Virus record (IMG/VR): IMGVR_UViG_3300017987_000001
Location: 143,858 to 207,857 of that record
Length of the DNA stretch: 64,000 nt
Direction: 5' to 3' (one strand)
Below the pieces are notes generated by a model. The model saw only the letters and a list, made by a program, of their open reading frames with translations. It was not told where the DNA came from and made no database searches. Each line of letters starts with the position of its first letter. Position 1 is the stretch's first letter. Of this stretch, positions 52,111 through 63,927 are shown one piece after another. Both the position numbers and the translations under genes were made by a program.

Positions 52111-52113
52111 GGG

Positions 52114-52743: not shown

Positions 52744-52762
52744 AAGTTCCCTTTCATGAGAA

Positions 52763-52838: not shown

Positions 52839-52846
52839 GCCGACTC

Positions 52847-53362
52847 CTACGCCCGACCGAAGTACGGCGTCCAATCCGCGTAGCCAAGGCGTACGGCTCG
52901 CTCACGGATCAGTAGTGCGCGGGTTGGTACCCACGGCTCGCGAAGGAGCTTCATTCCAGCCTCCTTCGGCGTGCGGTCATCCTTGGTGTTGTTGCACGGC
53001 TTGCATGCAGCAACAACGTTCTTCCACGAATGCTTCCCGTCACGACAGAGCGGGAGGACGTGGTCGATGGTGGCCGAGTTGTCCGACAGGTGCCGCCCGC
53101 AGTACTGGCACGTGAATCCGTCACGGGCAAGAACGTTCTTCTTGTTCAGCCCAATGCGCCGACTGCCCGGGATCACCACGTACTTGACCAGCGCGATGAC
53201 GCTCGGCAGCGGGAAGCTCTGCGTCGCCGAATGCACCTCATCGCTCCAGTACTCGTACACATCAACCTTCTGCTTGAGCATCAGCCCAAGCGCCCGCGTC
53301 CAGTGAATCATAGATAACGGCTCACCGTTCGCGTTCAGAAGCAGCACCTTTCTCTGCTGCAT
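52847..53362 (-). CDS. HNH endonuclease (McrA-like)
   Basis: CQYCG, TIDHVLP, ACKPCNNTK. Confidence 0.92.
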   Translation of the reverse strand: MQQRKVLLLNANGEPLSMIHWTRALGLMLKQKVDVYEYWSDEVHSATQSFPLPSVIALVKYVVIPGSRRIGLNKKNVLARDGFTCQYCGRHLSDNSATIDHVLPLCRDGKHSWKNVVAACKPCNNTKDDRTPKEAGMKLLREPWVPTRALLIRERAVRLGYADWTPYFGRA

Positions 53363-53383
53363 GACGTCCTCCTTCCAAAGTAG

Positions 53384-53461
53384 TGGTCGGGACGAGAGGA
53401 TTCGAACCTCCGACCTCCTGCTCCCAAAGCAGGCGCTCTAGCCAAGCTGAGCTACGTCCCG
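53384..53461 (-). tRNA. tRNA-Pro(UGG)
   Basis: CCTGC-TTTGGGA-GCAGG; CCA. Confidence 0.93.
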
Positions 53462-53868
53462 TCCTTTCCATGTAGCCGACGCTCTCTCTTCCACACCGTG
53501 GTGAACGTACCATGGTACGGATCCAGCTCCTGCATGCACTTGTCGATGAATGGTTTAATCGTGTTCATCATCGGCTGTGCCTGAATCAGGTCCATGATGT
53601 CCGGGAACTTGCGTGCCCCTCCCTCAACGTGATCCATCTGCAGGCAGCGCTGGCACTGCTCGATGCGCACATCAGGCTCTTCTCCGGTCATGACCTTCCA
53701 TCGGTGTCCGAATACCAAGCATATGATCTTGTGAAGAAAGCGCCAGCGCGAACCCCAGTAGAGTCGCTCACGCGTGACTGGCTTGCCAATCGTTGGAAAG
53801 CAGAACTTCTCGAATGGGTTCACCGTTACTTTCGGCGTAGACTTGAATACCTCAAGTGGTGGACTCAT
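53452..53868 (-). CDS. hypothetical protein
   Basis: CLVFGHRW...CQRC; stop inside tRNA-Pro(UGG). Confidence 0.6.
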   Translation of the reverse strand: MSPPLEVFKSTPKVTVNPFEKFCFPTIGKPVTRERLYWGSRWRFLHKIICLVFGHRWKVMTGEEPDVRIEQCQRCLQMDHVEGGARKFPDIMDLIQAQPMMNTIKPFIDKCMQELDPYHGTFTTVWKRERRLHGKDGT

Positions 53869-53878
53869 GATACCTTTC

Positions 53879-53952
53879 TGGAGCCGAGAGCGGGAGTCGA
53901 ACCCGCATCTGCCGATTACGAATCGGCTGCTCTTCCGTTGAGCTACCCCGGC
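53879..53952 (-). tRNA. tRNA-Thr(CGU)
   Basis: GCCGA-TTCGTAA-TCGGC; CCA. Confidence 0.92.
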
Positions 53953-54311
53953 TCCCTCTTACCCATCTTGTGCGCACACATGTCGCAGTCTGGGTTATCG
54001 CAACCGCTGCAAGGCTCCGTATGGCTGCTGACGTATAGGTCGCAGAAGGTTTCTCTGTACAACCCATGCCGTGGGCAGTCAGTGTTATCGCAACTGACGC
54101 AGTTACGTACTGACGTCTGCGCCAGTAGCGCTTCGACCTCCTTGACACGCGACTCCGCTGCCTCAGCGCGTGCGACGGCCTTTAGCTCGGCGGCTCTTGC
54201 TTCGCGCATCGCCGTGATGCAGCGGGCTGTGGCTTCGTTCTCTGCGCGTCGCAGCCGCTCGCTTTCGGCGAGCTGCGCGCGGACCTCGTCGATAGAGTTC
54301 TGCTCGCTCAC
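53943..54311 (-). CDS. coiled-coil + Cys-rich hypothetical protein
   Basis: CVSCDNTDC, CSGCDNPDC; stop inside tRNA-Thr(CGU). Confidence 0.6.
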   Translation of the reverse strand: MSEQNSIDEVRAQLAESERLRRAENEATARCITAMREARAAELKAVARAEAAESRVKEVEALLAQTSVRNCVSCDNTDCPRHGLYRETFCDLYVSSHTEPCSGCDNPDCDMCAHKMGKREPG

Positions 54312-54507
54312 TTGCTGTCCTTATCGGGATCCCGTATCGCTTCGAGGCTCTCCATCCATGAATCGCACAGTAGAGCTTCGTCGGAAACGATCCGTTGTGC
54401 GAGTACGAGAACAGCACCTCTGCGATATTGTTACACAGATCACACCGACGTGTCGAGATGTCGAGCATCCATGTCAACTCGCGAACCTCACGAAATCTCA
54501 GGTTCAT
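54163..54507 (-). CDS. hypothetical protein (3' part overlaps the next gene)
   Basis: CDLC...YCAIH. Confidence 0.4.
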   Translation of the reverse strand: MNLRFREVRELTWMLDISTRRCDLCNNIAEVLFSYSHNGSFPTKLYCAIHGWRASKRYGIPIRTASERAELYRRGPRAARRKRAAATRRERSHSPLHHGDARSKSRRAKGRRTR

Positions 54508-55333
54508 CGGGGATCTTCATTCCCTTCTGCTTCATGTATCCGCGAATGATCTCGTACTCCGAGGAGAGTACGCCATTCACGAAGTAGTTCCAGCTGTTCG
54601 CAGTCGTCAGGATGGTGCGCCAGAGCGAAACACGCATCCCGTAGATCGAATAGATCGGTGCGGTTTCGTACTCGTCGAGCTTCGTGAAGCTCGCGTCGAT
54701 CTCCTTCGCCAGCTTCTCGAACTCGTCCTGTGCCGGCTTCCAGTCACGACGGCGTGTGATCGTGCTGACACGTCGAAGCTGTACGTACCGGACGTTCCTG
54801 AACTGGCTGATGTACTGGATCAGGTCCAGCACCTCGGGCGCGTTGTTCTGCGTCACAACGATAGCCATGCGCAGTGGCACGGTGATCTTCGGAATGAGCT
54901 TCTCCCATTCGGGCATGCTACGGCGGCCAGTAAGGAAGAAGAAGCGATCCGGGTCACGCGTAAGCATCGTCAGCCCGACCGCGTCCTCCGTGCACGTTGT
55001 ACACGCGTTGAAGAGGGCAAGATCGGGGATCATGCCATTGCTGCGCACGCCGACGTAGAAGCCCTGCTCTTTCAAGTAGTCCACGAGTTCGTGAATGTAC
55101 TTGTAGCAGGTCGGGTCGGTGTTCTGCCCCGTGATGTACAGCTGCTTCACGAGGCCGTTGCGGCACCACCCGAGGAATTCCTCGAATCGTGACCACGCAT
55201 CGAAGTGGACCTTGTTGAAATCGTACTTCGAGAACTCCTTCTCCAGATCCTTGCCCAAGCAGAAGTTGCAGTCGAGCGTGCACTTCCCGAGCAAGTTGAT
55301 ATTGGCGAATGTCGCAGCGCTCCTACGCTGCAT
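54488..55333 (-). CDS. radical SAM protein
   Basis: CTLDCNFC (CxxxCxxC), YITGQNTDP, VRSNG. Confidence 0.85.
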   Translation of the reverse strand: MQRRSAATFANINLLGKCTLDCNFCLGKDLEKEFSKYDFNKVHFDAWSRFEEFLGWCRNGLVKQLYITGQNTDPTCYKYIHELVDYLKEQGFYVGVRSNGMIPDLALFNACTTCTEDAVGLTMLTRDPDRFFFLTGRRSMPEWEKLIPKITVPLRMAIVVTQNNAPEVLDLIQYISQFRNVRYVQLRRVSTITRRRDWKPAQDEFEKLAKEIDASFTKLDEYETAPIYSIYGMRVSLWRTILTTANSWNYFVNGVLSSEYEIIRGYMKQKGMKIPDEPEIS

Positions 55334-55880
55334 CGTCGCCTTCCACTTCCGACATTCGGATCCTGCGCCCTATGCCGCCACGTCCGGGCTGAAAGCGTTC
55401 CGCCTTCGCGTTGAGCGTCAGCTCTACCTCATGCACGCCTGAGAATAGTTCGGTGATCAGCCGGGCCGCCAGCATAACGTCAGCGACCTCTTCCAGCATG
55501 CGCGCTCTGCCGATGCGCCCGCGCCGGTAGTGATTCATGGCCGTCAGCAGTTCGCCCATCTCTTCGGACGCGATATGGAACGCATGCTCCATGGCCTCTT
55601 CGCCATAGCCCTCTCGGTGGCGAACCAGTGCCTTGCGCACGTGCACGCTGTTCACGTCGAGGCGAGGCATGCAAAACTCGCGAGCGGTCTCACCCTCAGC
55701 CAGCTCGTACGTCAATGCGCCGCAATGCGGGCACTGACCTGACGGTACTACGCCGTTCGGCGTGAGCCGCTCCTGTATGTCGCTGATCATTTCGAGGCTG
55801 CCGCCCCAGATCAACTCGCCACAGTCATCGCACATGTGCTGTGCGTGAGAGTTGGCTTCCTGTATGTAGCACTCCGTCAT
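55323..55880 (-). CDS. Zn-ribbon + MazG-like NTP pyrophosphohydrolase
   Basis: CDDC/CPHC; SEEMGELL...EEVADV. Confidence 0.75.
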   Translation of the reverse strand: MTECYIQEANSHAQHMCDDCGELIWGGSLEMISDIQERLTPNGVVPSGQCPHCGALTYELAEGETAREFCMPRLDVNSVHVRKALVRHREGYGEEAMEHAFHIASEEMGELLTAMNHYRRGRIGRARMLEEVADVMLAARLITELFSGVHEVELTLNAKAERFQPGRGGIGRRIRMSEVEGDDAA

Positions 55881-55895
55881 GGAGTTCCTTTCGTG

Positions 55896-55969
55896 TGGAG
55901 CCGGGACCGAGAATCGAACTCGGGTGCCTACCTTACCAAGGTAGTGCTTTACCACTAAGCTATCCCAGC
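55896..55969 (-). tRNA. tRNA-Thr(GGU)
   Basis: CTACC-TTGGTAA-GGTAG; CCA. Confidence 0.92.
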
Positions 55970-55975
55970 TCCGTG

Positions 55976-56242
55976 TTACGGAACGACGGTGAACTCTTCC
56001 ATGTGATGCGTGTCACAGAACGCTTCAACGATCAGCAGCATGTCCGCTAGATCGAGGTTGCTGTCGTAGTAGAGTCCTTCGTCGGCTTCGTGCTGAAGCA
56101 TCTCCAGATCCACATGAATGCTGGAGACTTCGTATTCCGGACGGAAGCCTTCGAGAAGCGCGAAGGCGTCCGGCTCGGAAAACCCCAGTTCCTCAGCGAA
56201 CCGGATCAACTCATGAAACTCTACGGTAACGGTAGCCCGCAT
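55976..56242 (-). CDS. acidic hypothetical protein
   Basis: AGGAG RBS. Confidence 0.65.
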   Translation of the reverse strand: MRATVTVEFHELIRFAEELGFSEPDAFALLEGFRPEYEVSSIHVDLEMLQHEADEGLYYDSNLDLADMLLIVEAFCDTHHMEEFTVVP

Positions 56243-56258
56243 GCGGGTCTCCTGTGAT

Positions 56259-56336
56259 TGGCACCCCCGGTAGGACTCGAACCCACAGGTTGTCCGGATA
56301 GAAGCCGGATGCCTTATCCAGTTTGGCTACGGGGGC
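56259..56336 (-). tRNA. tRNA-Arg(UCU)
   Basis: TCCGG-CTTCTAT-CCGGA; CCA. Confidence 0.9.
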
Positions 56337-56800
56337 TAGAAGGTACGCTTGAACCACGTCGAGATCTTGTCGGCGGTGATGTGCAGCAGTGCACTCGCCT
56401 CAAGTCCGGCAAGCGCAGAAACGAGCGACCACTTGTGTGTGATCGCCCACTCCTGCAGCTCAGGTAGCGACGTCTTCTCCAGTAGAACGAACGGAGTGAG
56501 CACCAGCGCCACGAGGGGGCTGATGTAGATGAGCCGCGCCAGCGTGCCAATGATCGGCGTGTGGCTGAGCAAGCCGCGATGAGGCACGTACTTCTGGTAC
56601 AACCGCCAGTACCATGAAAGCCAGCCCCAGTGCTTGTATGGCTCCGATTCGAGATCGAGGTCAGGATTGAAAGCCAGAGCCGCGAACAGAAAAGCTGAAA
56701 TGCCGGGCAGTGCCAGCACGTCAAAGAAGTAGATCGCCACAGGTGCAGCGATAAGTACCATCATGACGTTCAGCTTGTTGTGTCCGCGATCATCTGGCAT
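56336..56800 (-). CDS. DUF2227-like metal-binding membrane protein
   Basis: NPDLD, PHRGLLSHTP, LHITAD. Confidence 0.75.
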   Translation of the reverse strand: MPDDRGHNKLNVMMVLIAAPVAIYFFDVLALPGISAFLFAALAFNPDLDLESEPYKHWGWLSWYWRLYQKYVPHRGLLSHTPIIGTLARLIYISPLVALVLTPFVLLEKTSLPELQEWAITHKWSLVSALAGLEASALLHITADKISTWFKRTF

Positions 56801-56802
56801 TG

Positions 56803-57261
56803 CTACTCCTCGAAACCGTCGACCAAATCGGACTCCTCATAGCCATCAAGGATGTCCGGTCGCGTCGGAACCTCGATGATGTTGTCGCTTGCTGCCAAGT
56901 GATGCGCAGCAGCCCAATCCTCAACCAGCTGTCGACGCTCCGGATCCCATTGTTTGATGATGTCAATTGGCACGTCGTAACTGACACACAACAGTAGATC
57001 GCGCAGCACCTCAAAAGAGTTGGCACCCTCGGAGGGATTTGAACCCCCAACCTCAGGTTCGAAGCCTGAGATGATATCCGTTTCACCACGAGGGTATCTC
57101 TTATCCAACTGCTCCAATAGAAGATCTTCCTCGACATAATACGGGTCGTATCCGCCGGGAAACGCATTGCCGAGAAGCTGCATGAGCCGCAGATCCGGAT
57201 TGTTCAGCCAGATCCTGCGAATCTTCGATAAGACCTTGTTGATTCTTCCAGCGGGTCTCAC
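56803..57261 (-). CDS. hypothetical ORF reading through tRNA-Arg(UCG); may be two genes
   Basis: RINKVL...IWLNNPDLRLMQLL...YYVEED; no stop before or within the tRNA. Confidence 0.5.
   Translation of the reverse strand: MRPAGRINKVLSKIRRIWLNNPDLRLMQLLGNAFPGGYDPYYVEEDLLLEQLDKRYPRGETDIISGFEPEVGGSNPSEGANSFEVLRDLLLCVSYDVPIDIIKQWDPERRQLVEDWAAAHHLAASDNIIEVPTRPDILDGYEESDLVDGFEE
57021..57095 (-). tRNA. tRNA-Arg(UCG)
   Basis: TCAGG-CTTCGAA-CCTGA; CCA. Confidence 0.88.
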
Positions 57262-57274
57262 GCTGTTCCTTTCA

Positions 57275-57352
57275 TGGTCGGGATGAGAGGATTTGAACCT
57301 CCGACCTCCTGACCCCCAGTCAGGCGCGCTAACCAAACTGCGCTACATCCCG
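57275..57352 (-). tRNA. tRNA-Pro(GGG)
   Basis: CCTGA-CTGGGGG-TCAGG; CCA. Confidence 0.93.
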
Positions 57353-57355
57353 AAG

Positions 57356-57429
57356 TGGTGTGGTAACGGAGAATCGAACTCCGGCCTCGACGTTGGCAAC
57401 GTCGTGTACTGCCACTATACGATTACCAC
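57356..57429 (-). tRNA. tRNA-Gly(GCC)
   Basis: CGACG-TTGCCAA-CGTCG; CCA. Confidence 0.88.
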
Positions 57430-57674
57430 TACCTTTGTTCAGCGCCGACGTGGTCTTCGTGCGGCGTGTCCACCCAGAAGACCTTCTCCATCGGTATCCG
57501 TCTGACGATCGGGCGTCCCCATTCATCCTTGTCGGGTAGCTCGATGCAGAAGCATCCTGCCTTCACGTAGAAGCGCCGCACGTCCGGGTACCGTTTCGGC
57601 GTACTCGCTGGGTCGAATACGAACTCCACCCAGTACGGCGCCTTCTTCTTCGCTTTCATATCCCAAACGTCCAT
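57429..57674 (-). CDS. hypothetical protein
   Basis: Last base of the TAG is G1 of tRNA-Gly. Confidence 0.55.
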   Translation of the reverse strand: MDVWDMKAKKKAPYWVEFVFDPASTPKRYPDVRRFYVKAGCFCIELPDKDEWGRPIVRRIPMEKVFWVDTPHEDHVGAEQR

Positions 57675-58798
57675 TTCGCCACGTCTATCGCCTTTGGATC
57701 ACCGATGGCCTTCTTCGGGTCGTCCGAAAGCTTGACCACCGGGACGTTGTCGATCTCGACCAGCTTGATGACGATGTTGGCTGATATGGTGCCGGGCACG
57801 TCGTTCGTCAGATTCGTACCGATCCCGAATGCGACCTTGGTCTGCTGAGCGAACTCGCGCTGAAGGCTGATGCACTTCGGCACGTCCAGCGAGTCGCTGA
57901 AGATGATGGTCTTCGACATCGGATCGACGCGTAGCCACTTGTAGTGATTGATCATCCGCCGCGCGAACTCCTTCGAGTTACCGGAATCCTGACGGACACC
58001 GTCGAACAGCCGAGCAAGCTTGCCGTCGAAGTCCTGCAGGAATGCGCTGGTGCCGAACGTGTCGGGGAGCGCGATGCCGAGATCGCCCTCATAGACGTCG
58101 TTCCATGCCTCCAATGCGAACTTGTTGGCGTGTCGCAAACCTACCAGCGCGGAAATCGCTTGGATCCACTCGTGCGCCATCGTACCGATGGGCTTGACCC
58201 CGTGCTTCATGGCGAAGTGTACGTTGCTCGTTCCGATGAAGTTCGGGAACTTCTTCAGCGCTCCTACGACCATGTCCTGCATGTGGTACGAGTAGCGCCG
58301 CCGCGTTCCGAACTCGGCGAACCGGCAGTCTTCGGCAAGCAGCATGCCCGCCTTCTTCAGCGCCTGCTCCTTCTGCTCGTCCCAGTTGGGGCGAGGCTGC
58401 TGCTGCGCCATGATTTGCTCGGTGACGATCGCGAGCAGTGGCACCTCCCAGTAGATAGTTTCGGCCCACAGGCCACTGATCTCGATCTCCGTACCAGCGT
58501 CGGTCGGGGTGATCTTCACGAGGTGCGGATTCGGCTGAAAGTGCTCCAGCCAGTCGATGTACCAGCCTTCCAAGAAGGGGCACTTCTCACGGAGGAACAG
58601 CGACTCCTTGTCGGTCAGCTTCGCGCGGCTGTAGCCCCACATGTGAGAGCTGACGTACTTCGCCATCACCTTCGTGACGGGCTGATGAGCATTTCGGTTG
58701 ACGAACCTGTACGTAGCCTGCGCCTTGGGGAACTTCTTGAGGACAGCTTGCCCCATCGTAAGCTTGTACAGGTCGGTATCAAGGATCGAAGGTTCCAC
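57656..58798 (-). CDS. pncB: nicotinate phosphoribosyltransferase
   Basis: LDTDLYKLTM, EFGTRRR, GTSN, GTMAHEW, VRQDSG, FSDSL, FGIGT, KLSD. Confidence 0.93.
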   Translation of the reverse strand: MEPSILDTDLYKLTMGQAVLKKFPKAQATYRFVNRNAHQPVTKVMAKYVSSHMWGYSRAKLTDKESLFLREKCPFLEGWYIDWLEHFQPNPHLVKITPTDAGTEIEISGLWAETIYWEVPLLAIVTEQIMAQQQPRPNWDEQKEQALKKAGMLLAEDCRFAEFGTRRRYSYHMQDMVVGALKKFPNFIGTSNVHFAMKHGVKPIGTMAHEWIQAISALVGLRHANKFALEAWNDVYEGDLGIALPDTFGTSAFLQDFDGKLARLFDGVRQDSGNSKEFARRMINHYKWLRVDPMSKTIIFSDSLDVPKCISLQREFAQQTKVAFGIGTNLTNDVPGTISANIVIKLVEIDNVPVVKLSDDPKKAIGDPKAIDVAKWTFGI

Positions 58799-59421
58799 TA
58801 CAGCTGCAGCCGTGCGGTGTGCTCGATGAGCACGCCCGCCTTGGCCATCTCCTCGATCGCTTCGACCGTCGTCTTCGGATCCACGCCCTTGCACGCGTCC
58901 AACAGGACGCTTGCGACGTAGCCCCTCTTGACGGCGTCGAGCGCGGTCGCCTTGACGCAGTAGTCCGTGGCAAGGCCGCAGATGATGAGGTTGTCATGCG
59001 GAGGCGTACCGGCGTGCGCCAACGTCTGCAGCATGGCCGTCGGATTCCTGCCCGCGTCCTCGAAGCCGGAATAGCTGTCGAACTGCGGGTTGGTACCCTT
59101 CTCGACGATGAGCTTGCCCTCAACGACCAGCAGCTGACTGTGCAGCTCGTTGCCGGGAGTCTCGACCACGCAGTGATCGGGCCAGAACATCTGTGGCTGC
59201 CCGTTCAGCACGCCCATCGTGAATGGCTCCGTGCCCTGCATCGACGCGAAGCTCTTGTGCATCGGCGGGTGCATGTCCTTCGTGTAGATGATGGGCAATC
59301 GCGAGAAGGCGAACTTGTTGATGACCCGATTGACGACCGGGAGTATGTGGACGGCATCCGGTACGGCAAGGCTGCCGCCGATGAAGTCGTTCTGCATGTC
59401 GACGACTATGAGCGTCGGCAT
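58798..59421 (-). CDS. pncA: nicotinamidase
   Basis: VDMQNDF..GSLAV, DMHP, WPDHCV, YSGF, GLATDYCV. Confidence 0.95.
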   Translation of the reverse strand: MPTLIVVDMQNDFIGGSLAVPDAVHILPVVNRVINKFAFSRLPIIYTKDMHPPMHKSFASMQGTEPFTMGVLNGQPQMFWPDHCVVETPGNELHSQLLVVEGKLIVEKGTNPQFDSYSGFEDAGRNPTAMLQTLAHAGTPPHDNLIICGLATDYCVKATALDAVKRGYVASVLLDACKGVDPKTTVEAIEEMAKAGVLIEHTARLQL

Positions 59422-60203
59422 TATGTTCCTCTCTGGAAGACGAGCAGACCCGCGCCCGACGGCGGGATCTCGCGCTTGTGCTGCGTGCGCTGATAAATGT
59501 CCAATACCTTCTTGTGGAGATCTTCGAGACCCTCGGGGATCGTGTCGCCCTCACTAATGGCGTACACGATCTTGTCGAGGTCGTCGTAGGACGCACCGAG
59601 TTCCTCTTCGTCCGTCTGGCCTTCCCACAGCCCCGCGCTCGGAGCCTTGGTGATGATTGCTTCGGGAACGCCCTTAACGCGCGCGAGCTGCCGCACTTCG
59701 CCCTTCAGCAGCCCCATGATCGGCTCGATGTCGATGCCGCCATCGCCGTACTTCGTGAAGTAGCCCAGCACGTCCTCGGTGAGGTTGGTCGTGCCGACGA
59801 CAAGCAGGTTGTGCGCGTTCGCCACGGCGTAGAGCGCCACCATACGAAGCCGCGACTTCGTGTTCGCGCGGGCCATCTTGCTGCTTCGCAAGTGCCCCGA
59901 AAGCGCACCCAGCTCCAGCGTCTTGAACGTCGGGAACAGGTCGATCTGCTCGGTCGCGATACCGAACGTCTTCGCGACCTCCCGCGCGTGCTCGGCGCCG
60001 ATCTTCGAGCTTTCACAGTCGAGGATCAGCCCGCGTACGCGATTCGCGCCGAGCGCGCCTACGCACAGCGCTGCGACGAGCGACGAGTCCACACCGCCGC
60101 TCAAGCCGACGACGACGCCGCTCGCGCCGACGCCCGCGATGTAGTTCCTGATCCAGTCCTGAATGGCCTCGATCGTCTTCTGTTCGTCGAGTCTCTCAAT
60201 CAC
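59421..60203 (-). CDS. nadE: NH3-dependent NAD+ synthetase
   Basis: GLSGGVDS, NTKSRLRM, GYFTKYGDGG, KAPSAGLWEGQTDE. Confidence 0.95.
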   Translation of the reverse strand: MIERLDEQKTIEAIQDWIRNYIAGVGASGVVVGLSGGVDSSLVAALCVGALGANRVRGLILDCESSKIGAEHAREVAKTFGIATEQIDLFPTFKTLELGALSGHLRSSKMARANTKSRLRMVALYAVANAHNLLVVGTTNLTEDVLGYFTKYGDGGIDIEPIMGLLKGEVRQLARVKGVPEAIITKAPSAGLWEGQTDEEELGASYDDLDKIVYAISEGDTIPEGLEDLHKKVLDIYQRTQHKREIPPSGAGLLVFQRGT

Positions 60204-60220
60204 AACTTCCCCTATCTTGT

Positions 60221-60295
60221 TGGAGCCAGCGAAGGGAATCGAACCCCCATTTTCGGATTACAAAACCGACGTAATGGCCGTTATACGACGCTGGC
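60221..60295 (-). tRNA. tRNA-Thr(UGU)
   Basis: TCGGT-TTTGTAA-TCCGA; CCA. Confidence 0.88.
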
Positions 60296-60300
60296 TCAGT

Positions 60301-60888
60301 CTACTCCAGTTCGTCTTCGCGGATGCCGCCGCTCGTCGGGACTTCCGCTGTACCCGAACGCCCGCCTATGTAGGCGCGGTTGGACATGGCCCACTCGTCC
60401 CGCCATCGCCACTTGCCGAGGACGAGCTGTGCGTAGTCGTCCTGATCGAGTTCGATCTTGTCGTCGACCGACATCTCCAGCATCTGAATCGCGACGGCGA
60501 AGTCTTCGTCGTGCGACTTCGGCACCTCGATGCTGTTGCGCAGCGCACGCGGGAACTTCGCGAGCTTCGGACCCTTGTCCATCAGTTCGCGGCCCAACGC
60601 CATCATGCGCGAGCGCCAGCCCTCCATCGCCGCCTTGTACTCCTCGGCGTGGACGGCGCGTTGCTTCTTCACGGCTTCGATGAGATCCGCCTTCATGACG
60701 GGGAACTTGATACTCAGCATTCGGTCTCCTGATTCGCGACGCAGCGCTCGCACGTTTGCGATCGCTACGCCGAGCTTCTCATAGCACTTGAACCGCAGCG
60801 GCTTGCCGCGAATGTAGCGCGGTACGCGGATGCTGCGGAACGGTACCGCCAGCTCAGGCGGTACCCGTATTCCGCCTTCGTCGGTCAT
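60301..60888 (-). CDS. hypothetical protein (start uncertain)
   Basis: Helical ORF between tRNAs. Confidence 0.6.
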   Translation of the reverse strand: MTDEGGIRVPPELAVPFRSIRVPRYIRGKPLRFKCYEKLGVAIANVRALRRESGDRMLSIKFPVMKADLIEAVKKQRAVHAEEYKAAMEGWRSRMMALGRELMDKGPKLAKFPRALRNSIEVPKSHDEDFAVAIQMLEMSVDDKIELDQDDYAQLVLGKWRWRDEWAMSNRAYIGGRSGTAEVPTSGGIREDELE

Positions 60889-60907
60889 TGAGTTGTCCTT
60901 GAAAGAG

Positions 60908-60984
60908 TGGAGCACGCAGCGGGATTCGAACCCGCACCTTGAGCTTGGAAGGCTCGTATGCTAGCCGTTAAACACCATGCGTGC
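60908..60984 (-). tRNA. tRNA-Gly(UCC)
   Basis: GAGC-CTTCCAA-GCTC; CCA. Confidence 0.9.
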
Positions 60985-60987
60985 GAT

Positions 60988-61118
60988 CCGGAGGTGCGTG
61001 CCGTGGGTTTTCGGGTTATCCCTTGGCATCCTTACGGTAACCGTGGCTTCCCATTGGTGGCCCGACTCGCGTGGCTTTCAGCCCCTCGGGCCAACAGGGC
61101 ATTGTGCCGATCCTCCGG
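60988..61118 (-). ncRNA. candidate multi-stem structured RNA
   Basis: Closing stem CCGGAGG/CCUCCGG, GGCCCGA/UCGGGCC, GAAA and GUAA tetraloops. Confidence 0.4.
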
Positions 61119-61126
61119 GATAAACG

Positions 61127-61202
61127 TGGTAGCGGGACCAGCGAGTCGAACGCTGATTGCCCTAGGTTATGAGCCTAAGTCCGATACCGACCGGCCTCCC
61201 GC
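61127..61202 (-). tRNA. tRNA with CAU anticodon (Met or Ile2), atypical D arm
   Basis: TTAGG-CTCATAA-CCTAG; T arm CAGCG/CGCTG; CCA. Confidence 0.75.
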
Positions 61203-61212
61203 ATCGTCTGTT

Positions 61213-61299
61213 TGGTGCTCAGGAGAGGATTTGAACCTCCACGTCCTTGCGGACACCAGCCCCTCAGACTGGCGCGTCTACCAGTTCCACCACCTGAGC
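61213..61299 (-). tRNA. tRNA-Leu(GAG), long variable arm
   Basis: CCAGT-CTGAGGG-GCTGG; CCA. Confidence 0.93.
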
Positions 61300-61449
61300 A
61301 TGTGGGAGGGCCGTGCGCGCGACCGGCCCTCCAACCATAGCAAGCCCCGGGTAGGGGCGTACAAAGACTGGCAGGTATACCACCCATCACCGGGTTGAGG
61401 TTTCCCTGCCAAAACCAGAAGAGGACGCAGCACCGTCCTCGCCGAACGC

Positions 61450-61536
61450 TGGTGCCGCCGAGAGGATTTGAACCTCCACGGGATTTCTCCCACTAGCTCC
61501 TGAAGCTAGCGCGTATGCCAGTTTCACCACGGCGGC
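61450..61536 (-). tRNA. tRNA-Leu(CAG), long variable arm
   Basis: CTAGC-TTCAGGA-GCTAG; CCA. Confidence 0.93.
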
Positions 61537-61548
61537 AGTAAATGTCAA

Positions 61549-61626
61549 TGGTACTGGGGACAGGATTCGAACCTGCAACATCCTGCTCCTAAGGCAGGCG
61601 CCTCTGCCAGATTGGGCTACCCCAGC
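61549..61626 (-). tRNA. tRNA-Leu(UAG), short variable loop
   Basis: CCTGC-CTTAGGA-GCAGG; CCA. Confidence 0.88.
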
Positions 61627-61628
61627 AC

Positions 61629-61704
61629 TGGGGCGAGCGGCGGGAATTGAACCCGCATCCCCACGGTCACAACGTGGTGTCTTTGCCACTGGACCACGCC
61701 CGCC
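61629..61704 (-). tRNA. tRNA-His(GUG)
   Basis: CCACG-TTGTGAC-CGTGG; G-1:C73; CCA. Confidence 0.92.
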
Positions 61705-61738
61705 ATCAGAAAGTTGAACGCGTGCAACAATGTGAGAA

Positions 61739-61817
61739 TGGCGCCCCCGACAGGATTCGAACCTGCGGCCCCCTGATCGACAATCAGGTGCTCTAAACCG
61801 GGCTGAGCTACGAGGGC
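61739..61817 (-). tRNA. tRNA-Asp(GUC)
   Basis: CCTGA-TTGTCGA-TCAGG; CCA. Confidence 0.9.
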
Positions 61818-61827
61818 GCGTATCTTG

Positions 61828-61904
61828 TGGTACCTCCGAGGGGACTCGAACCCCTACTCTCCACAGTGAGAGTGTGGTGACTTGGCCAGTTCGTCTACGG
61901 AGGC
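61828..61904 (-). tRNA. tRNA-Glu(CUC)
   Basis: CCACA-CTCTCAC-TGTGG; CCA. Confidence 0.9.
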
Positions 61905-61916
61905 TACTGGATGAAA

Positions 61917-61992
61917 TGGAACCCGCGACCGGATTCGAACCGGCACTCTCTAGGGTGAAAACCTAGTGACTTAACCATTCGTCTACGCGGGC
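61917..61992 (-). tRNA. tRNA-Glu(UUC)
   Basis: CTAGG-TTTTCAC-CCTAG; CCA. Confidence 0.9.
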
Positions 61993-62291
61993 TTCTCATC
62001 CGTGGCTTCGGCGAGCATCTGCAGGTACAGCTTCTTCCTGTCCTCGGAGGACAGCGGATGCTCGCCACGCATGCCGCACACCATCAGCTCGTTGAGCAGC
62101 GTCTTGGTGCCCATCGAACGGATGCGCAGCAGGCTGTTGGTTGCGGCACGAAGATGATTGATGTCGCCGGTTCGCAAGTAGCTGAGAAGCTGAAGGCTCA
62201 TATGCCCCGCCTCGTCCGCCGTCGCGAACACCGTATCGACCATCGTCTTCGGTACGTCAGGACTCGTCACGATCGTCACATCTTCAGACAT
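61983..62291 (-). CDS. hypothetical protein
   Basis: AAGGAG RBS; stop is nt 8-10 of tRNA-Glu(UUC). Confidence 0.65.
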   Translation of the reverse strand: MSEDVTIVTSPDVPKTMVDTVFATADEAGHMSLQLLSYLRTGDINHLRAATNSLLRIRSMGTKTLLNELMVCGMRGEHPLSSEDRKKLYLQMLAEATDEKPA

Positions 62292-62302
62292 GTCGCTCCT
62301 TC

Positions 62303-62376
62303 TGGATGCCCCACCGGGACTCGAACCCGGAACCCTCTGCTTCAAAGGCAGATGCTCTGCTTTGAGCTATGGGGCA
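62303..62376 (-). tRNA. tRNA-Gln(UUG)
   Basis: TCTGC-CTTTGAA-GCAGA; CCA. Confidence 0.88.
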
Positions 62377-62387
62377 CCCTTCGTTGG

Positions 62388-62462
62388 TGGCTCCACGGGG
62401 AGGACTTGAACCTCCAACCCTCCGGTTAACAGCCGGATGCACTACCGTTGTGCTACCGTGGA
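62388..62462 (-). tRNA. tRNA-Asn(GUU)
   Basis: TCCGG-CTGTTAA-CCGGA; CCA. Confidence 0.92.
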
Positions 62463-62464
62463 AA

Positions 62465-62538
62465 TGGTGGACCGACCGGGACTCGAACCCGGATCTCCTG
62501 CTTGCAAAACAGGGGTTCTCCCTTTGAACTATCAGCCC
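62465..62538 (-). tRNA. tRNA-Ala(UGC)
   Basis: CCTGT-TTTGCAA-GCAGG; CCA. Confidence 0.9.
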
Positions 62539-62541
62539 AGA

Positions 62542-62617
62542 TGGTTGCCCCGGGAGGACTTGAACCTCCAACTTCCTGATCCAGAATCAGGCGTTCTGCC
62601 AATTGAACTACGGGGCA
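62542..62617 (-). tRNA. tRNA-Gln(CUG)
   Basis: CCTGA-TTCTGGA-TCAGG; CCA. Confidence 0.92.
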
Positions 62618-62618
62618 A

Positions 62619-62695
62619 TGGTGGCCGCACTGGGAATCGAACCCAGAACCTCCCGATTAAGAGTCGGGGACTCTACGCAATTGAGTTACACGGCC
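62619..62695 (-). tRNA. tRNA-Lys(CUU)
   Basis: CCCGA-CTCTTAA-TCGGG; CCA. Confidence 0.92.
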
Positions 62696-62703
62696 GGTAT
62701 ATA

Positions 62704-62779
62704 GAGAAGGCGACGAAGAGGTGTAGAGATCCGTTTACATGGCAATTGTATGTAATCCCTACGGGCATTCGCCTTACTC
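62704..62779 (-). ncRNA. Y-RNA-like element 1 (short)
   Basis: AAGGCGA-AUG...GUAGGGAUU/GAUCUCUAC...UUCG-UCGCCUU. Confidence 0.65.
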
Positions 62780-62784
62780 ACAGA

Positions 62785-62862
62785 TGGTGGGAACGACCGG
62801 ATTTGAACCGGTAACACCGAGTGCTTCAAACTCGTGCTCTACCTGAGTTGAGCTACGTTCCC
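62785..62862 (-). tRNA. tRNA-Phe(GAA)
   Basis: CGAGT-TTGAAGC-ACTCG; CCA. Confidence 0.9.
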
Positions 62863-62889
62863 AAATTCGTTTTCCCGCTCCGCAAGAGA

Positions 62890-62965
62890 TGGTAGGCGCG
62901 GCAGGATTCGAACCTGCGATACCCAGTTTGTAAGACTGGTGTCTTAGCCGCTAGACTACGCGCCT
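62890..62965 (-). tRNA. tRNA-Val(UAC)
   Basis: CCAGT-CTTACAA-ACTGG; CCA. Confidence 0.92.
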
Positions 62966-62975
62966 GCCCAAGTAT

Positions 62976-63085
62976 GTGAACAGCGACAAGAAGTGGAGAG
63001 TGATAGCCTCCATAGGCTTCCCCCGGTAATCGGGGGATCAGGAATTGAACTTGATGTACACCCTACCGGGCATTCGCTGTATCAC
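62976..63085 (-). ncRNA. Y-RNA-like element 2
   Basis: ACAGCGA-AUG...GGGUGUACAU...CUUG-UCGCUGU. Confidence 0.65.
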
Positions 63086-63088
63086 GCG

Positions 63089-63176
63089 TGGTGGGGGCAG
63101 ACGGAGTCGAACCGCCAAAGCCTTTCGGCGGGAGATTTACAGTCTCTTGGGATCGCCACGTTCCCTGTGTACCCCC
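63089..63176 (-). tRNA. tRNA-Tyr(GUA), atypical acceptor/D-arm junction
   Basis: GAGA-CTGTAAA-TCTC; long variable arm; CCA. Confidence 0.82.
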
Positions 63177-63184
63177 AGTGAAGC

Positions 63185-63320
63185 TGCGTCGACTAGAAAT
63201 GGAAGAGTCGTTTTTGCGCTCTACCCACTGAGCTACCGCCGCATCAAGAGCGGCGGGCTGGACTCGAACCAGCGACCTCATCCTCCGTATGGATGTAGAC
63301 CCGTCCGGGCATTCGACGCA
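63185..63320 (-). ncRNA. Y-RNA-like element 3 with circularly permuted tRNA module (YrlA-like)
   Basis: UGCGUCGA-AUG...; T arm GCUGG-UUCGAGU-CCAGC; acceptor CCGCCGC/GCGGCGG closed by UCUUGAU; then D arm; ...CUAG-UCGACGCA. Confidence 0.75.
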
Positions 63321-63328
63321 ACATTTAT

Positions 63329-63397
63329 GTGAACGGACGACGAATAGGTAGGAGTCACCTTTATAATGTAGACCCCAAGGACATTCGTCCGTGTCAC
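63329..63397 (-). ncRNA. Y-RNA-like element 4 (short)
   Basis: ACGGACGA-AUG...GGGGUCUACAU...ACUCC...UUCG-UCGUCCGU. Confidence 0.65.
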
Positions 63398-63402
63398 GCT
63401 TG

Positions 63403-63482
63403 TGGTGGTGCGAGCTGGAGTCGAACCAGCGACCTCCTGTGTATCAGACAGGTGCTCTAACCAAGGGCTGAGCTACCGCACC
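63403..63482 (-). tRNA. tRNA-Ile(GAU)
   Basis: CCTGT-CTGATAC-ACAGG; CCA. Confidence 0.92.
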
Positions 63483-63524
63483 ACTTACGTTTGTGCATTC
63501 CGTATTCGATTTTCAAAGAGCAGC

Positions 63525-63596
63525 GTCGGCGACGAGTTGGGTTGTAGAGATCTGGTATGCTTAAATGGCATGTAATCCCTACGTTCATTCGCCGAC
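63525..63596 (-). ncRNA. Y-RNA-like element 5 (short)
   Basis: GUCGGCGA-AUG...GUAGGGAUU/GAUCUCUAC...CUCG-UCGCCGAC. Confidence 0.65.
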
Positions 63597-63607
63597 ACAC
63601 TTCTAGA

Positions 63608-63757
63608 GTGAAGCAGGCACGACAAGAATTGACGAGTCAACCCCGTCAGGGTCAGCTGCTCTGCCACTGAGCTATACGCCCATCAATGGGCGCAGAAGGA
63701 TTCGAACCCCCGACCCGCTGATTATGATGTAGACCCGATCAGCATTCGTACCTACAC
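63608..63757 (-). ncRNA. Y-RNA-like element 6 with circularly permuted tRNA module (YrlA-like)
   Basis: AGGUACGA-AUG...; UCAGC; T arm with UUCGAAU; acceptor UGCGCCC/GGGCGUA closed by AUUGAU; D arm; GCUGA; ...CUUG-UCGUGCCU. Confidence 0.75.
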
Positions 63758-63773
63758 TCGATTGTCAAAGAGC

Positions 63774-63850
63774 TGGTGGATCCGCTCGGACTCGAACCGA
63801 GGACCGTCCGCTTATGAGGCGGATGCTCTAACCGACTGAGCTACGGATCC
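63774..63850 (-). tRNA. tRNA with CAU anticodon (Ile2 or elongator Met)
   Basis: TCCGC-CTCATAA-GCGGA; CCA. Confidence 0.9.
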
Positions 63851-63852
63851 AC

Positions 63853-63927
63853 TGGAGGGCCGGACTGGATTCAAACGAGCATAAGCACGATCTGCAGTCG
63901 TGCGCCTAGTCGTTCGGCCACCGACCC
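63853..63927 (-). tRNA. tRNA-Cys(GCA), weak T stem
   Basis: CACGA-CTGCAGA-TCGTG; U73; T stem GCTCG/CCAGT mispaired; CCA. Confidence 0.72.

What the first reader, a model, noticed from the sequence alone, without database searches (positions are those of the whole stretch)
63608..63757. Permuted tRNA module that would splice to a perfect tRNA-Met(CAU) (element 6)
Seen: the 3' half begins ...UACA-UCAUAA-UCAGC and the 5' half ends GCUGA-C. Joining them gives GCUGA-CUCAUAA-UCAGC, a canonical CAU anticodon arm on a 7-bp acceptor closed by AUUGAU; the linker of element 3 also ends in UUGAU. Known: permuted tRNA genes mature through circular intermediates in some algae and archaea. Inference: either a YrlA mimic recently derived from tRNA-Met, or a true permuted tRNA needing an RNA ligase. 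The second case would be new for a phage as far as I know.
Basis: partly seen in the sequence, partly recalled or inferred. Interest (0 to 1): 0.75.

Follow-up and report, generated by a model that had tools for sequence, protein, structure and literature searches.

The report
Phage Y RNA built from tRNA(CAU)
The element is a Y RNA of the YrlA kind, a small RNA that binds the phage's own Ro60 protein. Its tRNA-shaped part descends from a bacterial CAU-anticodon tRNA, and nothing indicates that it is spliced into a working tRNA.

Summary
On the minus strand, window 63611-63757 holds a tRNA 3' half, a 6-nt linker and a tRNA 5' half. Joined in silico they give a 71-nt cloverleaf that ARAGORN calls tRNA-Met(CAU). 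This is not chance: the joined 22-nt anticodon arm plus variable loop occurs exactly in more than 120 bacterial tRNA(CAU) genes.

The element is nevertheless best read as a YrlA-type Y RNA:
- Its ends form the Ro60-binding stem (ACGAAUG / CUUGUCG).
- The phage (207.9 kb) encodes a Ro60/Rsr orthologue.
- Six other elements in the genome share the stem, and one lies directly downstream of rsr.
- A covariance model built only from YrlA-like RNAs of other Rsr-encoding phages scores the element 99.9 bits over its full length.

The "permuted" topology is the defining YrlA topology. In homologues the spacer where the split anticodon loop would lie varies from 0 to 8 nt. There is no bulge-helix-bulge motif. 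The phage encodes no RtcB, Rnl1/2, splicing endonuclease or CCA-adding enzyme. It already has three CAU tRNAs.

Not excluded: RNase P nicking and CCA addition at the 7-bp acceptor stem, as shown for M. smegmatis YrlA. No RNA data were available.

The parts
63611..63757 (-). Element 6 as a whole: a 147-nt YrlA-type Y RNA gene
   Evidence: The ends pair. Rfam YrlA scores 35.5 bits, E 3e-5, over model positions 1-114. Phage model R1 scores 99.9 bits, E 1e-21, over positions 1-141.
63746..63755 (-). 5' strand of the closing (Ro60-binding) stem. It holds the first four bases (ACGA) of the ACGAAUG motif, which spans 63743-63749
   Evidence: It pairs with 63613-63622. The CGAAUG motif is shared by all seven elements.
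63613..63622 (-). 3' strand of the closing stem, preceded by the conserved AAUUCUUG loop (63623-63630)
   Evidence: The sequence CUUGUCG is conserved in the homologues.
63732..63740 (-). Helix 2, 5' strand (GA-u-CGGGUC), followed by the invariant UACA at 63728-63731
   Evidence: It pairs with 63631-63638 in the YrlA and R1 alignments. The paralogues covary at this helix. UACA is invariant in 24 phage homologues.
63631..63638 (-). Helix 2, 3' strand (GACUCGUC)
63722..63727 (-). UCAUAA: the nucleotides corresponding to tRNA positions 33-38, including CAU
   Evidence: They are part of the 22-mer found exactly in bacterial tRNA(CAU) genes.
63717..63721 (-). Anticodon-stem 3' strand, UCAGC (tRNA positions 39-43)
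   Evidence: It pairs with 63652-63656. The helix covaries across 10 phage homologues.
63695..63711 (-). T arm: GGGGG-UUCGAAU-CCUUC
63688..63694 (-). Acceptor 3' strand, UGCGCCC
63682..63687 (-). Linker AUUGAU closing the acceptor stem. There is no encoded CCA. The first A sits at the discriminator position, and the U lies at -1 before G+1
   Evidence: By contrast, 36 of the 38 phage tRNAs encode CCA.
63675..63681 (-). Acceptor 5' strand, GGGCGUA
63658..63672 (-). D arm: GCUC-AGUGGCA-GAGC
63651..63656 (-). Anticodon-stem 5' strand GCUGA (positions 27-31) plus C32
63639..63650 (-). 3'-side spacer CCUGACGGGGUU. With C32 it may form a small CCC/GGG hairpin
   Evidence: Homologues L193 and L206 carry a hairpin at the same place.
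63181..63324 (-). Element 3: the second tRNA-like Y RNA, with a local anticodon-like hairpin CAUCC-AUACGGA-GGAUG
   Evidence: Rfam YrlA 48.4 bits. R1 113.2 bits..
62705..62777 (-). Element 1: a minimal Y RNA-like stem-loop with the same CGAAUG / UCGUCG stem
62980..63080 (-). Element 2: Y RNA-like, with a different module of three small hairpins
   Evidence: R1 45.2 bits.
63333..63392 (-). Element 4: a minimal Y RNA-like element with the loop UACAUUAUAAAGGU
   Evidence: R1 36.1 bits.
63523..63598 (-). Element 5: a minimal Y RNA-like element
63774..63850 (-). A genuine tRNA-Met(CAU) gene 16 nt upstream of element 6 on the same strand
   Evidence: ARAGORN and Rfam tRNA at 73.6 bits.

Best explanation
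Element 6 is a gene for a YrlA-class Y RNA. It is one of seven Y RNA-like genes in a 207.9-kb phage that encodes its own Ro60/Rsr protein.

Inferred steps:
- It is transcribed on the minus strand together with the surrounding tRNA array.
- Its 5' and 3' ends pair into a stem that carries the conserved ACGAAUG / CUUGUCG internal loop, and this stem is the docking site for the phage Rsr ring.
- The rest folds as a tRNA body: an acceptor stem closed by AUUGAU, a T arm, a D arm and a 5-bp anticodon stem that continues into the Y stem.
- This body acts as the effector or tether module. In studied systems that module links Ro60 to PNPase (D. radiodurans, S. Typhimurium, Thermus phage phiLo).

Shown here:
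- The tRNA body descends from a bacterial-type elongator tRNA(CAU).
- It has been kept tRNA-shaped. All four stem substitutions relative to the bacterial genes preserve pairing.

The RNA is not spliced into a tRNA. The CAU triplet is a relic at the point where the Y stem enters the former anticodon loop.

The element has a full 7-bp acceptor stem and a U before G+1. It may therefore be nicked by RNase P and receive CCA, as M. smegmatis YrlA does. That would give a two-piece RNA held together by base pairing.
For: - Rfam YrlA matches 63613-63752(-) over model positions 1-114 at E 3e-5. Element 3 matches at 48.4 bits.
- Covariance model R1 was built from 24 YrlA-like RNAs of other Rsr-encoding phage contigs, none from this genome. 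It scores element 6 at 99.9 bits (E 1e-21) and element 3 at 113.2 bits, both over the full length.
- The genome encodes a 555-572 aa Ro60/Rsr. Pfam vWA_Ro60 scores 35.2 bits, above the cut-off. D. radiodurans Rsr (2nvo) matches at E 4e-16 and Thermus phage Ro60 (9l5y/9kop) at E 4e-12. There are 3177 homologues among the 8000 candidates scored, up to 61% identical.
- Seven elements share the CGAAUG...UACA motif and a paired 3' GUCG strand. One lies about 45 nt downstream of rsr and ends in a terminator-like hairpin.
- The cloverleaf-like permuted structure covaries in 10 phage homologues. 90% of cells are paired, against 38-47% when the partners are slid, and 16 of 21 pairs change on both sides.
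- The spacer between the invariant UACA and the anticodon-stem strand is 0-8 nt in homologues, so a 7-nt loop is not conserved.
- The phage has no RtcB, no Rnl2-type ligase, no tRNA-splicing endonuclease and no CCA-adding enzyme.
- The phage already has three tRNA(CAU) genes. 36 of its 38 tRNAs encode CCA, and element 6 does not.
- Literature: the YrlA anticodon stem is formed by distant 5' and 3' segments and YrlA lacks an anticodon loop (bioRxiv 10.1101/312249). M. smegmatis YrlA, which has a 7-bp acceptor stem, is cut by RNase P and receives CCA in vivo, and YrlA was reported in 22 phages (PMC4201824). A phage Ro60 binds phage Y RNA-like RNAs that carry a CGAA motif and also engages host PNPase (PMC12135203).
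Against: - The Rfam score (35.5 bits) is below the YrlA gathering score of 69.
- Element 6 lies about 47 kb from rsr across the genome terminus, or 159 kb the other way. Published YrlA sets required a distance of 4 kb or less.
- The first G of the published GNCGAAN0-1G motif is a U here (UACGAAUG).
- The thermodynamic minimum-free-energy fold (-63.7 kcal/mol) is not the YrlA fold (-52.5 to -56.8 kcal/mol). It pairs UCAGC with an upstream GCUGAU.
- Both sides of the former anticodon loop are retained letter-perfect, which a pure structural mimic does not need.
- There is no expression or binding data. No RNA run was listed, and the complex prediction was not performed.
Confidence: 0.8

Rival explanations
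1. A two-piece, tRNA-like Y RNA that goes further than mimicry. RNase P cuts the AUUGAU linker before G+1, the 3' end is trimmed to A73, and the host enzyme adds CCA. The nicked RNA is then recognised, or even charged or modified, by a CAU-specific enzyme (MetRS, or TilS if the ancestor was tRNA-Ile2) through the exposed C34-A35-U36 and A73. No ligation is needed. The pieces stay together by base pairing, as in two-piece tmRNA.
For: - The acceptor stem has 7 bp, with U at -1 and A at the discriminator position.
[quoted passage not shown] The authors raised aminoacylation as a possibility (PMC4201824).
- UCAUAA and C32 are intact and identical to bacterial tRNA(CAU).
- All stem substitutions preserve pairing.
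Against: - The phage encodes no CCA-adding enzyme, so the step would depend on the host.
- Acceptor stems and loops differ widely among phage homologues: 7 to 10 bp, with loops of 2 to 30 nt. Cleavage is therefore not a family feature.
- An anticodon loop that is open to a long stem may not fit an anticodon-binding domain.
- There are no data on processing.
Confidence: 0.12
2. A true permuted tRNA gene. The transcript is cut 5' of U33 and 3' of C32, the new ends are ligated (through a circular intermediate or otherwise), and the acceptor linker is removed. The product is a functional tRNA(CAU).
For: - The in-silico join is a canonical tRNA and about 90% identical to real bacterial tRNA(CAU) genes.
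- The order 3' half, short linker, 5' half is the order seen in the permuted tRNA genes of Cyanidioschyzon merolae (my own knowledge).
- Bacterial rsr-yrlA loci are often in an operon with the ligase RtcB (PMC7790460), so a host ligase could exist.
Against: - There is no bulge-helix-bulge motif. The junction is a 10 x 13-nt internal loop between the anticodon stem and helix 2 (and my own reading of the sequence).
- The phage has no splicing endonuclease, RtcB or Rnl2-type ligase. The Rnl1 search is uninformative because its control rang nowhere.
- Homologues with the same topology have spacers of 0-8 nt. Most lack a U at the position of U33.
- The flanks are a conserved Rsr-binding module shared with six elements that have no such tRNA halves.
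- The phage already has three CAU tRNAs.
- No CCA is encoded, unlike in 36 of the 38 phage tRNAs.
Confidence: 0.04
3. An artefact or decaying remnant: the T arm and acceptor end of one tRNA followed by the start of the next tRNA in a tandem array, with no function of its own.
For: Tandem tRNAs do give false YrlA hits. Examples are 62582-62666 and 61589-61680, which match model positions 24/28-113 only. The pitfall is noted in PMC4201824.
Against: - The two acceptor strands of element 6 are complementary to each other, not to flanking sequence.
- The matches cover the full model, including both strands of the Rsr-binding stem.
- Substitutions relative to bacterial tRNA(CAU) are compensatory.
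- The fold z-score is -3.8.
Confidence: 0.03

Closest known systems
YrlA (Rfam RF02553): bacterial and phage Y RNAs of S. Typhimurium, M. smegmatis and mycobacteriophages (PMC4201824; bioRxiv 10.1101/312249)
   Same: - The ends pair into a Ro60-binding stem with a CGAA-containing 5' strand.
- The tRNA-like domain has the order anticodon-stem strand, T arm, closed acceptor stem, D arm, anticodon-stem strand.
- The tertiary-contact nucleotides are kept: U8, A14, G15:C48, G18G19, and the UUCGA T loop.
- Rsr is encoded in the same genome.
- The acceptor stem has 7 bp, as in M. smegmatis.
   Different: - The score is below the Rfam gathering score.
- The element sits inside a tRNA array tens of kb from rsr.
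- It is one of seven Y RNA-like genes in the genome.
- The module is still about 90% identical to a real tRNA(CAU) and keeps the nucleotides of positions 32-38.
- The first G of the GNCGAAN0-1G motif is a U.
Thermus phage phiLo Ro60 with Yrl1 and Yrl2 (PMC12135203; PDB 9L5Y, 9KOP)
   Same: A phage-encoded Ro60 (matched by this phage's Rsr at E 4e-12) together with phage-encoded Y RNA-like RNAs recognised by a CGAA motif in a stem-bulge-stem.
   Different: The phiLo Yrls lie next to the Ro60 gene, and no tRNA-like module is reported in the passages I read. Binding and PNPase recruitment were shown there by experiment. Nothing of the kind is shown here.
Circularly permuted tRNA genes of Cyanidioschyzon merolae and some archaea (my own knowledge, not checked in the library)
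   Same: The 3' half lies upstream of the 5' half, a short linker joins the acceptor strands, and the joined product is a canonical cloverleaf.
   Different: Those precursors form a bulge-helix-bulge motif that is cut by the splicing endonuclease and then ligated. Here no such motif or enzyme was found, and the flanks are a Ro60-binding stem.
Two-piece (permuted) tmRNA of alpha-proteobacteria and cyanobacteria (my own knowledge). Rfam tmRNA_permuted gave only 19.7 bits, E 0.42, over 63701-63801
   Same: It is a bacterial precedent for a permuted tRNA-like gene whose product is processed in the acceptor linker and works as two base-paired pieces without ligation.
   Different: Element 6 has no coding reading frame, no pseudoknots, and no significant match to the family.

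Membership tests
YrlA / bacterial Y RNA | A Ro60/Rsr orthologue is encoded by the same genome | tested here: met
   A 555-572 aa ORF lies at genome 46470-48188(-). vWA_Ro60 scores 35.2 bits against a cut-off of 27.7. TROVE scores 22.8 against a cut-off of 23. 2nvo Rsr matches at E 3.8e-16. There are 3177 homologues among the 8000 candidates scored.
YrlA / bacterial Y RNA | 5' and 3' ends pair into a stem whose 5' strand carries GNCGAAN0-1G (PMC4201824) | tested here: inconclusive
   The stem is present (10 bp) and CGAAUG is present. The first G of the motif is a U in element 6 (UACGAAUG) and an A in element 2. The phage homologues are looser still (CAGAUG, CGGAUG, UAAAUG).
YrlA / bacterial Y RNA | A tRNA-like domain with T arm, D arm, closed acceptor stem and a long-range anticodon stem | tested here: met
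   Covariation was found in 10 homologues. The topology matches that described for the S. Typhimurium crystal structure (10.1101/312249).
YrlA / bacterial Y RNA | Score at or above the Rfam RF02553 gathering threshold (69 bits) | tested here: not met
   The score is 35.5 bits, E 3e-5, over the full model. Only 1 of 49 Rsr-encoding phage records reaches the threshold. An independent phage-derived model gives 99.9 bits.
YrlA / bacterial Y RNA | Encoded within 4 kb of rsr (the criterion of PMC4201824) | tested here: not met
   Element 6 is at genome 207468-207614 and rsr at 46470-48188. A different Y RNA-like element (genome 46087-46425) is the one adjacent to rsr. In other Rsr phages, YrlA-like hits also lie in tRNA arrays far from rsr.
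YrlA / bacterial Y RNA | Bound by Rsr, and carrying tRNA-type modifications | not testable with these tools
   Complex prediction did not fold the pair. No RNA run was listed.
Permuted tRNA gene | The 3' half lies upstream of the 5' half, and the joined product is a canonical tRNA | tested here: met
   ARAGORN calls the 71-nt join tRNA-Met(CAU). It is 64-65/71 identical to bacterial tRNA(CAU) genes.
Permuted tRNA gene | A bulge-helix-bulge motif (or another defined cleavage structure) at the junction of the precursor ends | tested here: not met
   A 10-nt strand (UACAUCAUAA) and a 13-nt strand (CCCUGACGGGGUU) separate the anticodon stem from helix 2. The best pairing between them is 3 bp (UCA/UGA), which leaves a symmetric 3x3 loop rather than staggered 3-nt bulges (sequence, folds).
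Permuted tRNA gene | An endonuclease and an RNA ligase are available | tested here: inconclusive
   The phage lacks PF01974, PF01139 and PF09414. The PF09511 search is uninformative because its control rang nowhere. The host is unknown and may have RtcB.
Permuted tRNA gene | The junction that yields a 7-nt anticodon loop is conserved among homologues | tested here: not met
   The spacer from UACA to the stem is 0, 4, 4, 5, 5, 5, 6, 6, 7 or 8 nt in ten homologues. Only 3 of 10 have a U at the place of U33.
Permuted tRNA gene | A junction-spanning mature RNA or a circular intermediate exists | not testable with these tools
   Only DNA metagenome runs hold the stretch. No RNA run was listed.

The most novel reading that the evidence does not exclude
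Element 6 is more than a mimic. It could be matured to a working tRNA(CAU): cleavage on both sides of the Y stem, followed by ligation by a host RtcB-type enzyme. That would make the Rsr-binding stem an intron-like, protein-gated insert in an anticodon loop.

Alternatively, after RNase P nicking and CCA addition, it could be charged or modified through its exposed CAU. That would be a first case of an aminoacylatable Y RNA.
Probability: 0.06. Interest if true: 0.85.

Novelty: new member of a known kind. Interest (0 to 1): 0.4.

Why it matters
Y RNAs with a tRNA-like domain, including some in phages, have been known since 2014, so the class itself is not new.

What this locus adds is an unusually clear evolutionary snapshot. 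The effector module of this YrlA is still about 90% identical to living bacterial tRNA(CAU) genes. The break point can be placed to the nucleotide, between positions 32 and 33. All stem changes since then are compensatory. This directly supports the proposal that YrlA RNAs arose from tRNAs.

The locus also shows that Rsr-encoding large phages can carry whole sets of Y RNAs interleaved with their tRNA genes. There are seven here, and several in other IMG/VR records. This points to shared transcription and processing, and to a role for Ro60-Y RNA particles in phage tRNA or RNA metabolism.

For annotation, such elements should not be called tRNA or permuted tRNA genes.

Tried and rejected
- A BLASTN search of the array against GenBank phages found only short tRNA cross-matches and no relative.
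- The pattern CGAATG-N6-7-GGGTCTACA in IMG/VR gave 111 single hits, about the number expected by chance (my own estimate), and these were not used.
- The Rsr protein alone found no relative in viral contigs. An alignment of homologues was needed.
Only their ±10 kb could be scanned. They hold minimal Y RNAs but no orthologue of element 6.
- An element-6-specific pattern (TACANNNTAATCAGCRGGTC) gave 3 IMG/VR hits, none with a Y RNA, so they are taken as chance matches.
- Sequencing runs: only DNA metagenomes (sediment, seawater, marsh, mangrove) hold the stretch, and no RNA run was listed. Laying four DNA runs gave mostly tRNA cross-hits from other organisms and no informative variant of element 6.
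- Complex prediction for Rsr with element 6 was not folded, so it is no evidence either way.
- I first thought UCAUAA was merely a Y RNA loop motif, because element 4 has UACAUUAUAA and relatives have UACAUUACUUAUAA. The exact 22-mer matches in bacterial tRNA(CAU) genes make a tRNA origin the better reading, although the leading UC overlaps the conserved UACAUC motif.
- Recent copying from one of the phage's own CAU tRNAs is rejected. The best identity is 55/71, no better than to unrelated isoacceptors.

Full report
**Setting.** The window is the last 64 kb of a 207,857-bp IMG/VR virus record that has 123-bp direct terminal repeats. ARAGORN finds 38 tRNA genes in the genome. Nearly all lie on the minus strand at the right end, and six more lie in the first 2.2 kb, so the array runs across the terminus. 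The finding lies inside this array, 16 nt downstream (in RNA sense) of a genuine tRNA-Met(CAU) gene at 63774-63850.

**The observation.** Read on the minus strand, the element contains, in this order:
- UACA-UCAUAA
- UCAGC (tRNA positions 39-43)
- GGGUC (variable loop)
- a T arm, GGGGG-UUCGAAU-CCUUC
- UGCGCCC (acceptor 3' strand)
- the linker AUUGAU
- GGGCGUA (acceptor 5' strand)
- UA
- a D arm, GCUC-AGUGGCA-GAGC
- A26
- GCUGA (positions 27-31) and C

Joining the 31-nt 5' half to the 40-nt 3' half gives a 71-nt sequence. ARAGORN calls it tRNA-Met(CAU) with a 7-bp acceptor stem (one G-U), a 5-bp anticodon stem and the loop CUCAUAA. It finds nothing in the unjoined element. The linker of element 3 (UCUUGAU) does end in UUGAU. 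The description is therefore accurate.

**Is it more than chance?** At first I doubted the anticodon loop, for two reasons. The leading UC overlaps a motif (UACAUC) that is conserved in all Y RNA-like elements. Element 4 also reads UACAUUAUAA.

A scan of one genome per prokaryotic species settled the matter. The genomes include Ignavibacteria, Bacteroidota, Zixibacteria, Acidobacteriota, WOR-3, Spirochaetota and Omnitrophota. At the four loci I checked, ARAGORN annotates a tRNA(CAU) gene there.

Those genes (GGGCCCAUAGCUCAG...UGGGCCCA) are 64-65/71 identical to the joined element, and 42/49 identical outside the 22-mer used for the search. The best of the phage's own tRNAs reaches only 55/71, no better than unrelated isoacceptors.

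All four stem differences from, for example, the Melioribacter gene preserve pairing:
- pair 5:68 changes from C-G to G-C
- pair 6:67 changes from C-G to U-G
- pair 51:63 changes from A-U to G-U

The remaining differences fall in the D and T loops.

The module is therefore a genuine descendant of a bacterial-type elongator tRNA(CAU). It is broken between positions 32 and 33 and has been kept under selection for tRNA shape. I cannot tell whether the ancestor was tRNA-Met or tRNA-Ile2. The bacterial genes have C4-G69 and C5-G68. From memory, these are TilS determinants in E. coli, so this is a lead and not a test.

**What the element is.** Several independent lines point to a YrlA-type Y RNA.

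- *Rfam.* RF02553 (YrlA) matches 63613-63752(-) over the whole model (positions 1-114) at 35.5 bits, E 3e-5. It matches element 3 (63183-63319) at 48.4 bits. Both scores are below the gathering score of 69.
- *Rsr.* The genome encodes a Ro60/Rsr orthologue at 46470-48188(-). vWA_Ro60 scores above the Pfam cut-off and TROVE just below it. D. radiodurans Rsr matches at E 4e-16 and Thermus phage phiLo Ro60 at E 4e-12. There are 3177 homologues among the 8000 candidates scored, up to 61% identical. The nearest named cellular ones are from Acidobacteriota.
- *Paralogues.* The 5' strand of the stem, CGAAUG-N6-7-GG..UACA, occurs seven times in the genome. Six copies are interleaved with tRNAs at window 62705-63757. 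The seventh starts about 45 nt after the rsr stop codon and ends in a terminator-like hairpin. In all seven the sequence upstream of CGA pairs with the sequence downstream of a 3' UCG, and a second helix covaries (GGGAUU/GAUCUC, GGGUG/CACUC, GGGUC/GACUC). The enclosed module differs: tRNA-like in elements 3 and 6, small hairpins in the others.
- *An independent model.* 53 IMG/VR contigs encode Rsr relatives. In 20 of the 49 records searched, Rfam YrlA finds matches at E <= 1e-4, mostly full-length and often several per record, many inside tRNA arrays on the tRNA strand. A covariance model built from 24 of these sequences, none from this genome, scores element 3 at 113.2 bits, element 6 at 99.9 bits (E 1e-21, model positions 1-141), element 2 at 45 bits and element 4 at 36 bits.

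Element 6 is thus a member of a phage YrlA family that Rfam's thresholds under-detect.

**The 'permuted' topology.** In the S. Typhimurium YrlA crystal structure the anticodon stem is formed by nt 15-27 with nt 83-93. The acceptor stem is a closed loop, and there is no anticodon loop (bioRxiv 10.1101/312249). A tRNA 3' half followed by a 5' half, with the anticodon stem running into the Ro60-binding stem, is therefore what defines YrlA. It is not a sign of a spliced gene.

Ten phage homologues from eight records have the same long-range 5-bp stem, with different sequences: AAAGA/UCUUU, AUUGG/CCAGU, CCGGG/CCCGG, CAAGC/GCUUG and others. Across the four helices, 90% of cells pair, against 38-47% when the partners are slid. 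16 of 21 pairs change on both sides. I chose these ten because they pair in that helix, so its paired fraction is partly by selection. Even so, by my estimate only about 0.4 perfect stems would be expected by chance among 28 sequences, and eight were found.

In these homologues the spacer between the invariant UACA and the stem is 0 to 8 nt. Only 3 of 10 have a U where U33 would be. The family does not conserve a junction that could give a 7-nt loop.

**Tests of the permuted-tRNA reading.**
- The junction is a 10 x 13-nt internal loop, not a bulge-helix-bulge.
- The phage has no match to RtcB, Rnl2-type ligase, tRNA-splicing endonuclease or the CCA-adding enzyme family. The controls rang in reference genomes.
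- The Rnl1 search is uninformative because its control rang nowhere.
- The phage already has three CAU tRNAs.
- 36 of its 38 tRNAs encode their own CCA, whereas the acceptor stem of element 6 is followed by AUUGAU.
- No RNA run was listed for this stretch, so there is no direct evidence on transcripts.

**Likely mechanism.** The following steps are inferred by analogy, not shown.
- The element is co-transcribed with the tRNA array and released by the tRNA-processing enzymes.
- The closing stem with ACGAAUG / CUUGUCG binds the phage Rsr ring.
- The tRNA-shaped module recruits or occludes a partner. In D. radiodurans and S. Typhimurium, Y RNA tethers Rsr to PNPase (PMC4201824). Thermus phage phiLo Ro60 binds two phage Y RNA-like RNAs and forms a complex with host PNPase (PMC12135203).

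Element 6 has a full 7-bp acceptor stem, which was given as the reason why M. smegmatis YrlA is cut by RNase P and then receives CCA in vivo (PMC4201824). A nicked two-piece form is therefore plausible here too. The phage would depend on the host's CCA-adding enzyme for it.

**Unexplained.**
- The minimum-free-energy fold (-63.7 kcal/mol, z = -3.8) differs from the YrlA fold (-52.5 to -56.8 kcal/mol). It pairs UCAGC with an upstream GCUGAU in the helix 2 strand. Relatives often read GCNGA at that place, so this may be coincidence.
- The letter-perfect retention of positions 32-38 is not required of a mimic. It may reflect recency, or a partner that reads the CAU.

**Verdict.** The 'YrlA mimic derived from a CAU tRNA' reading is supported, and the 'true permuted tRNA' reading is not. 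The element is a new member of a known class. The broader pattern, sets of Y RNAs embedded in the tRNA arrays of Rsr-encoding large phages, appears not to have been described in the papers I could read.

Noticed in passing
window 62705-63598 (-) and L001:401-739 (-): Besides element 6 there are six more Y RNA-like elements with the same CGAAUG...UACA / GUCG stem. Five are interleaved with tRNA genes. The sixth is 339 nt long, lies directly downstream of rsr, and ends in a terminator-like hairpin.
   Followed up: partly
window 63093-63176 (-): A tRNA-like gene that ARAGORN missed. Rfam's best hit is tRNA-Sec at 32 bits, below threshold. By eye it is a class II tRNA with the loop CUGUAAA (anticodon GUA), a long variable arm and an encoded CCA, so it is probably the phage's tRNA-Tyr.
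   Followed up: partly
window 29279-29353 (-): A tRNA with anticodon CUA, called tRNA-Pyl by ARAGORN and scoring 63 bits against Rfam tRNA. It lies far from the array. It is a possible amber suppressor, which raises the question of TAG recoding in part of the genome.
   Followed up: no
window 63758-63772 and 63506-63520 (-): The 15-nt motif CUCUUUGA(C/A)AAUCGA occurs twice in the array: just upstream of element 6, and just downstream of element 5 ahead of tRNA-Ile. It may be a promoter or a processing signal. The sigma-70 scan found no promoter-like site.
   Followed up: partly
L178, L179, L184, L186, L187, L200, L202, L207; window 63181-63324 (element 3): Many phage YrlA-like RNAs carry a local hairpin just 5' of the variable loop. 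It has a 3-5-bp stem and a 7-nt loop that looks like an anticodon loop (CUUUUAA, CUAUUAA, CUUGUAA, CUGCUAA; in element 3, CAUCC-AUACGGA-GGAUG). These look like tRNAs permuted at position 26|27 rather than in the anticodon loop.
   Followed up: partly
L182, L192, L206, L179, L186, L188 and others (IMG/VR records G006, G032, G047, G013, G039, G034): In other Rsr-encoding phage contigs, YrlA-like RNAs also sit inside tRNA arrays on the tRNA strand. There are often several per genome (up to 7), tens of kb from rsr.
   Followed up: partly
window 63717-63742 (-): The predicted minimum-free-energy fold pairs the anticodon-stem strand (A)UCAGC with an upstream GCUGAU instead of the downstream GCUGA. 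This could be an alternative conformation or a coincidence.
   Followed up: partly
genome 1-2200 (outside the window; L009 covers 1-1957): The tRNA array continues across the genome terminus. Six more tRNA genes (Met-CAU, Trp, Ser x3, Lys-UUU) lie in the first 2.2 kb on the same strand, next to the 123-bp terminal repeat.
   Followed up: no
window 51468-63927 (-): Several tRNA genes are followed within a few bases by GAAAGGA or AAGGAG-like sequences. This suggests small ORFs with ribosome-binding sites between the tRNAs.
   Followed up: no
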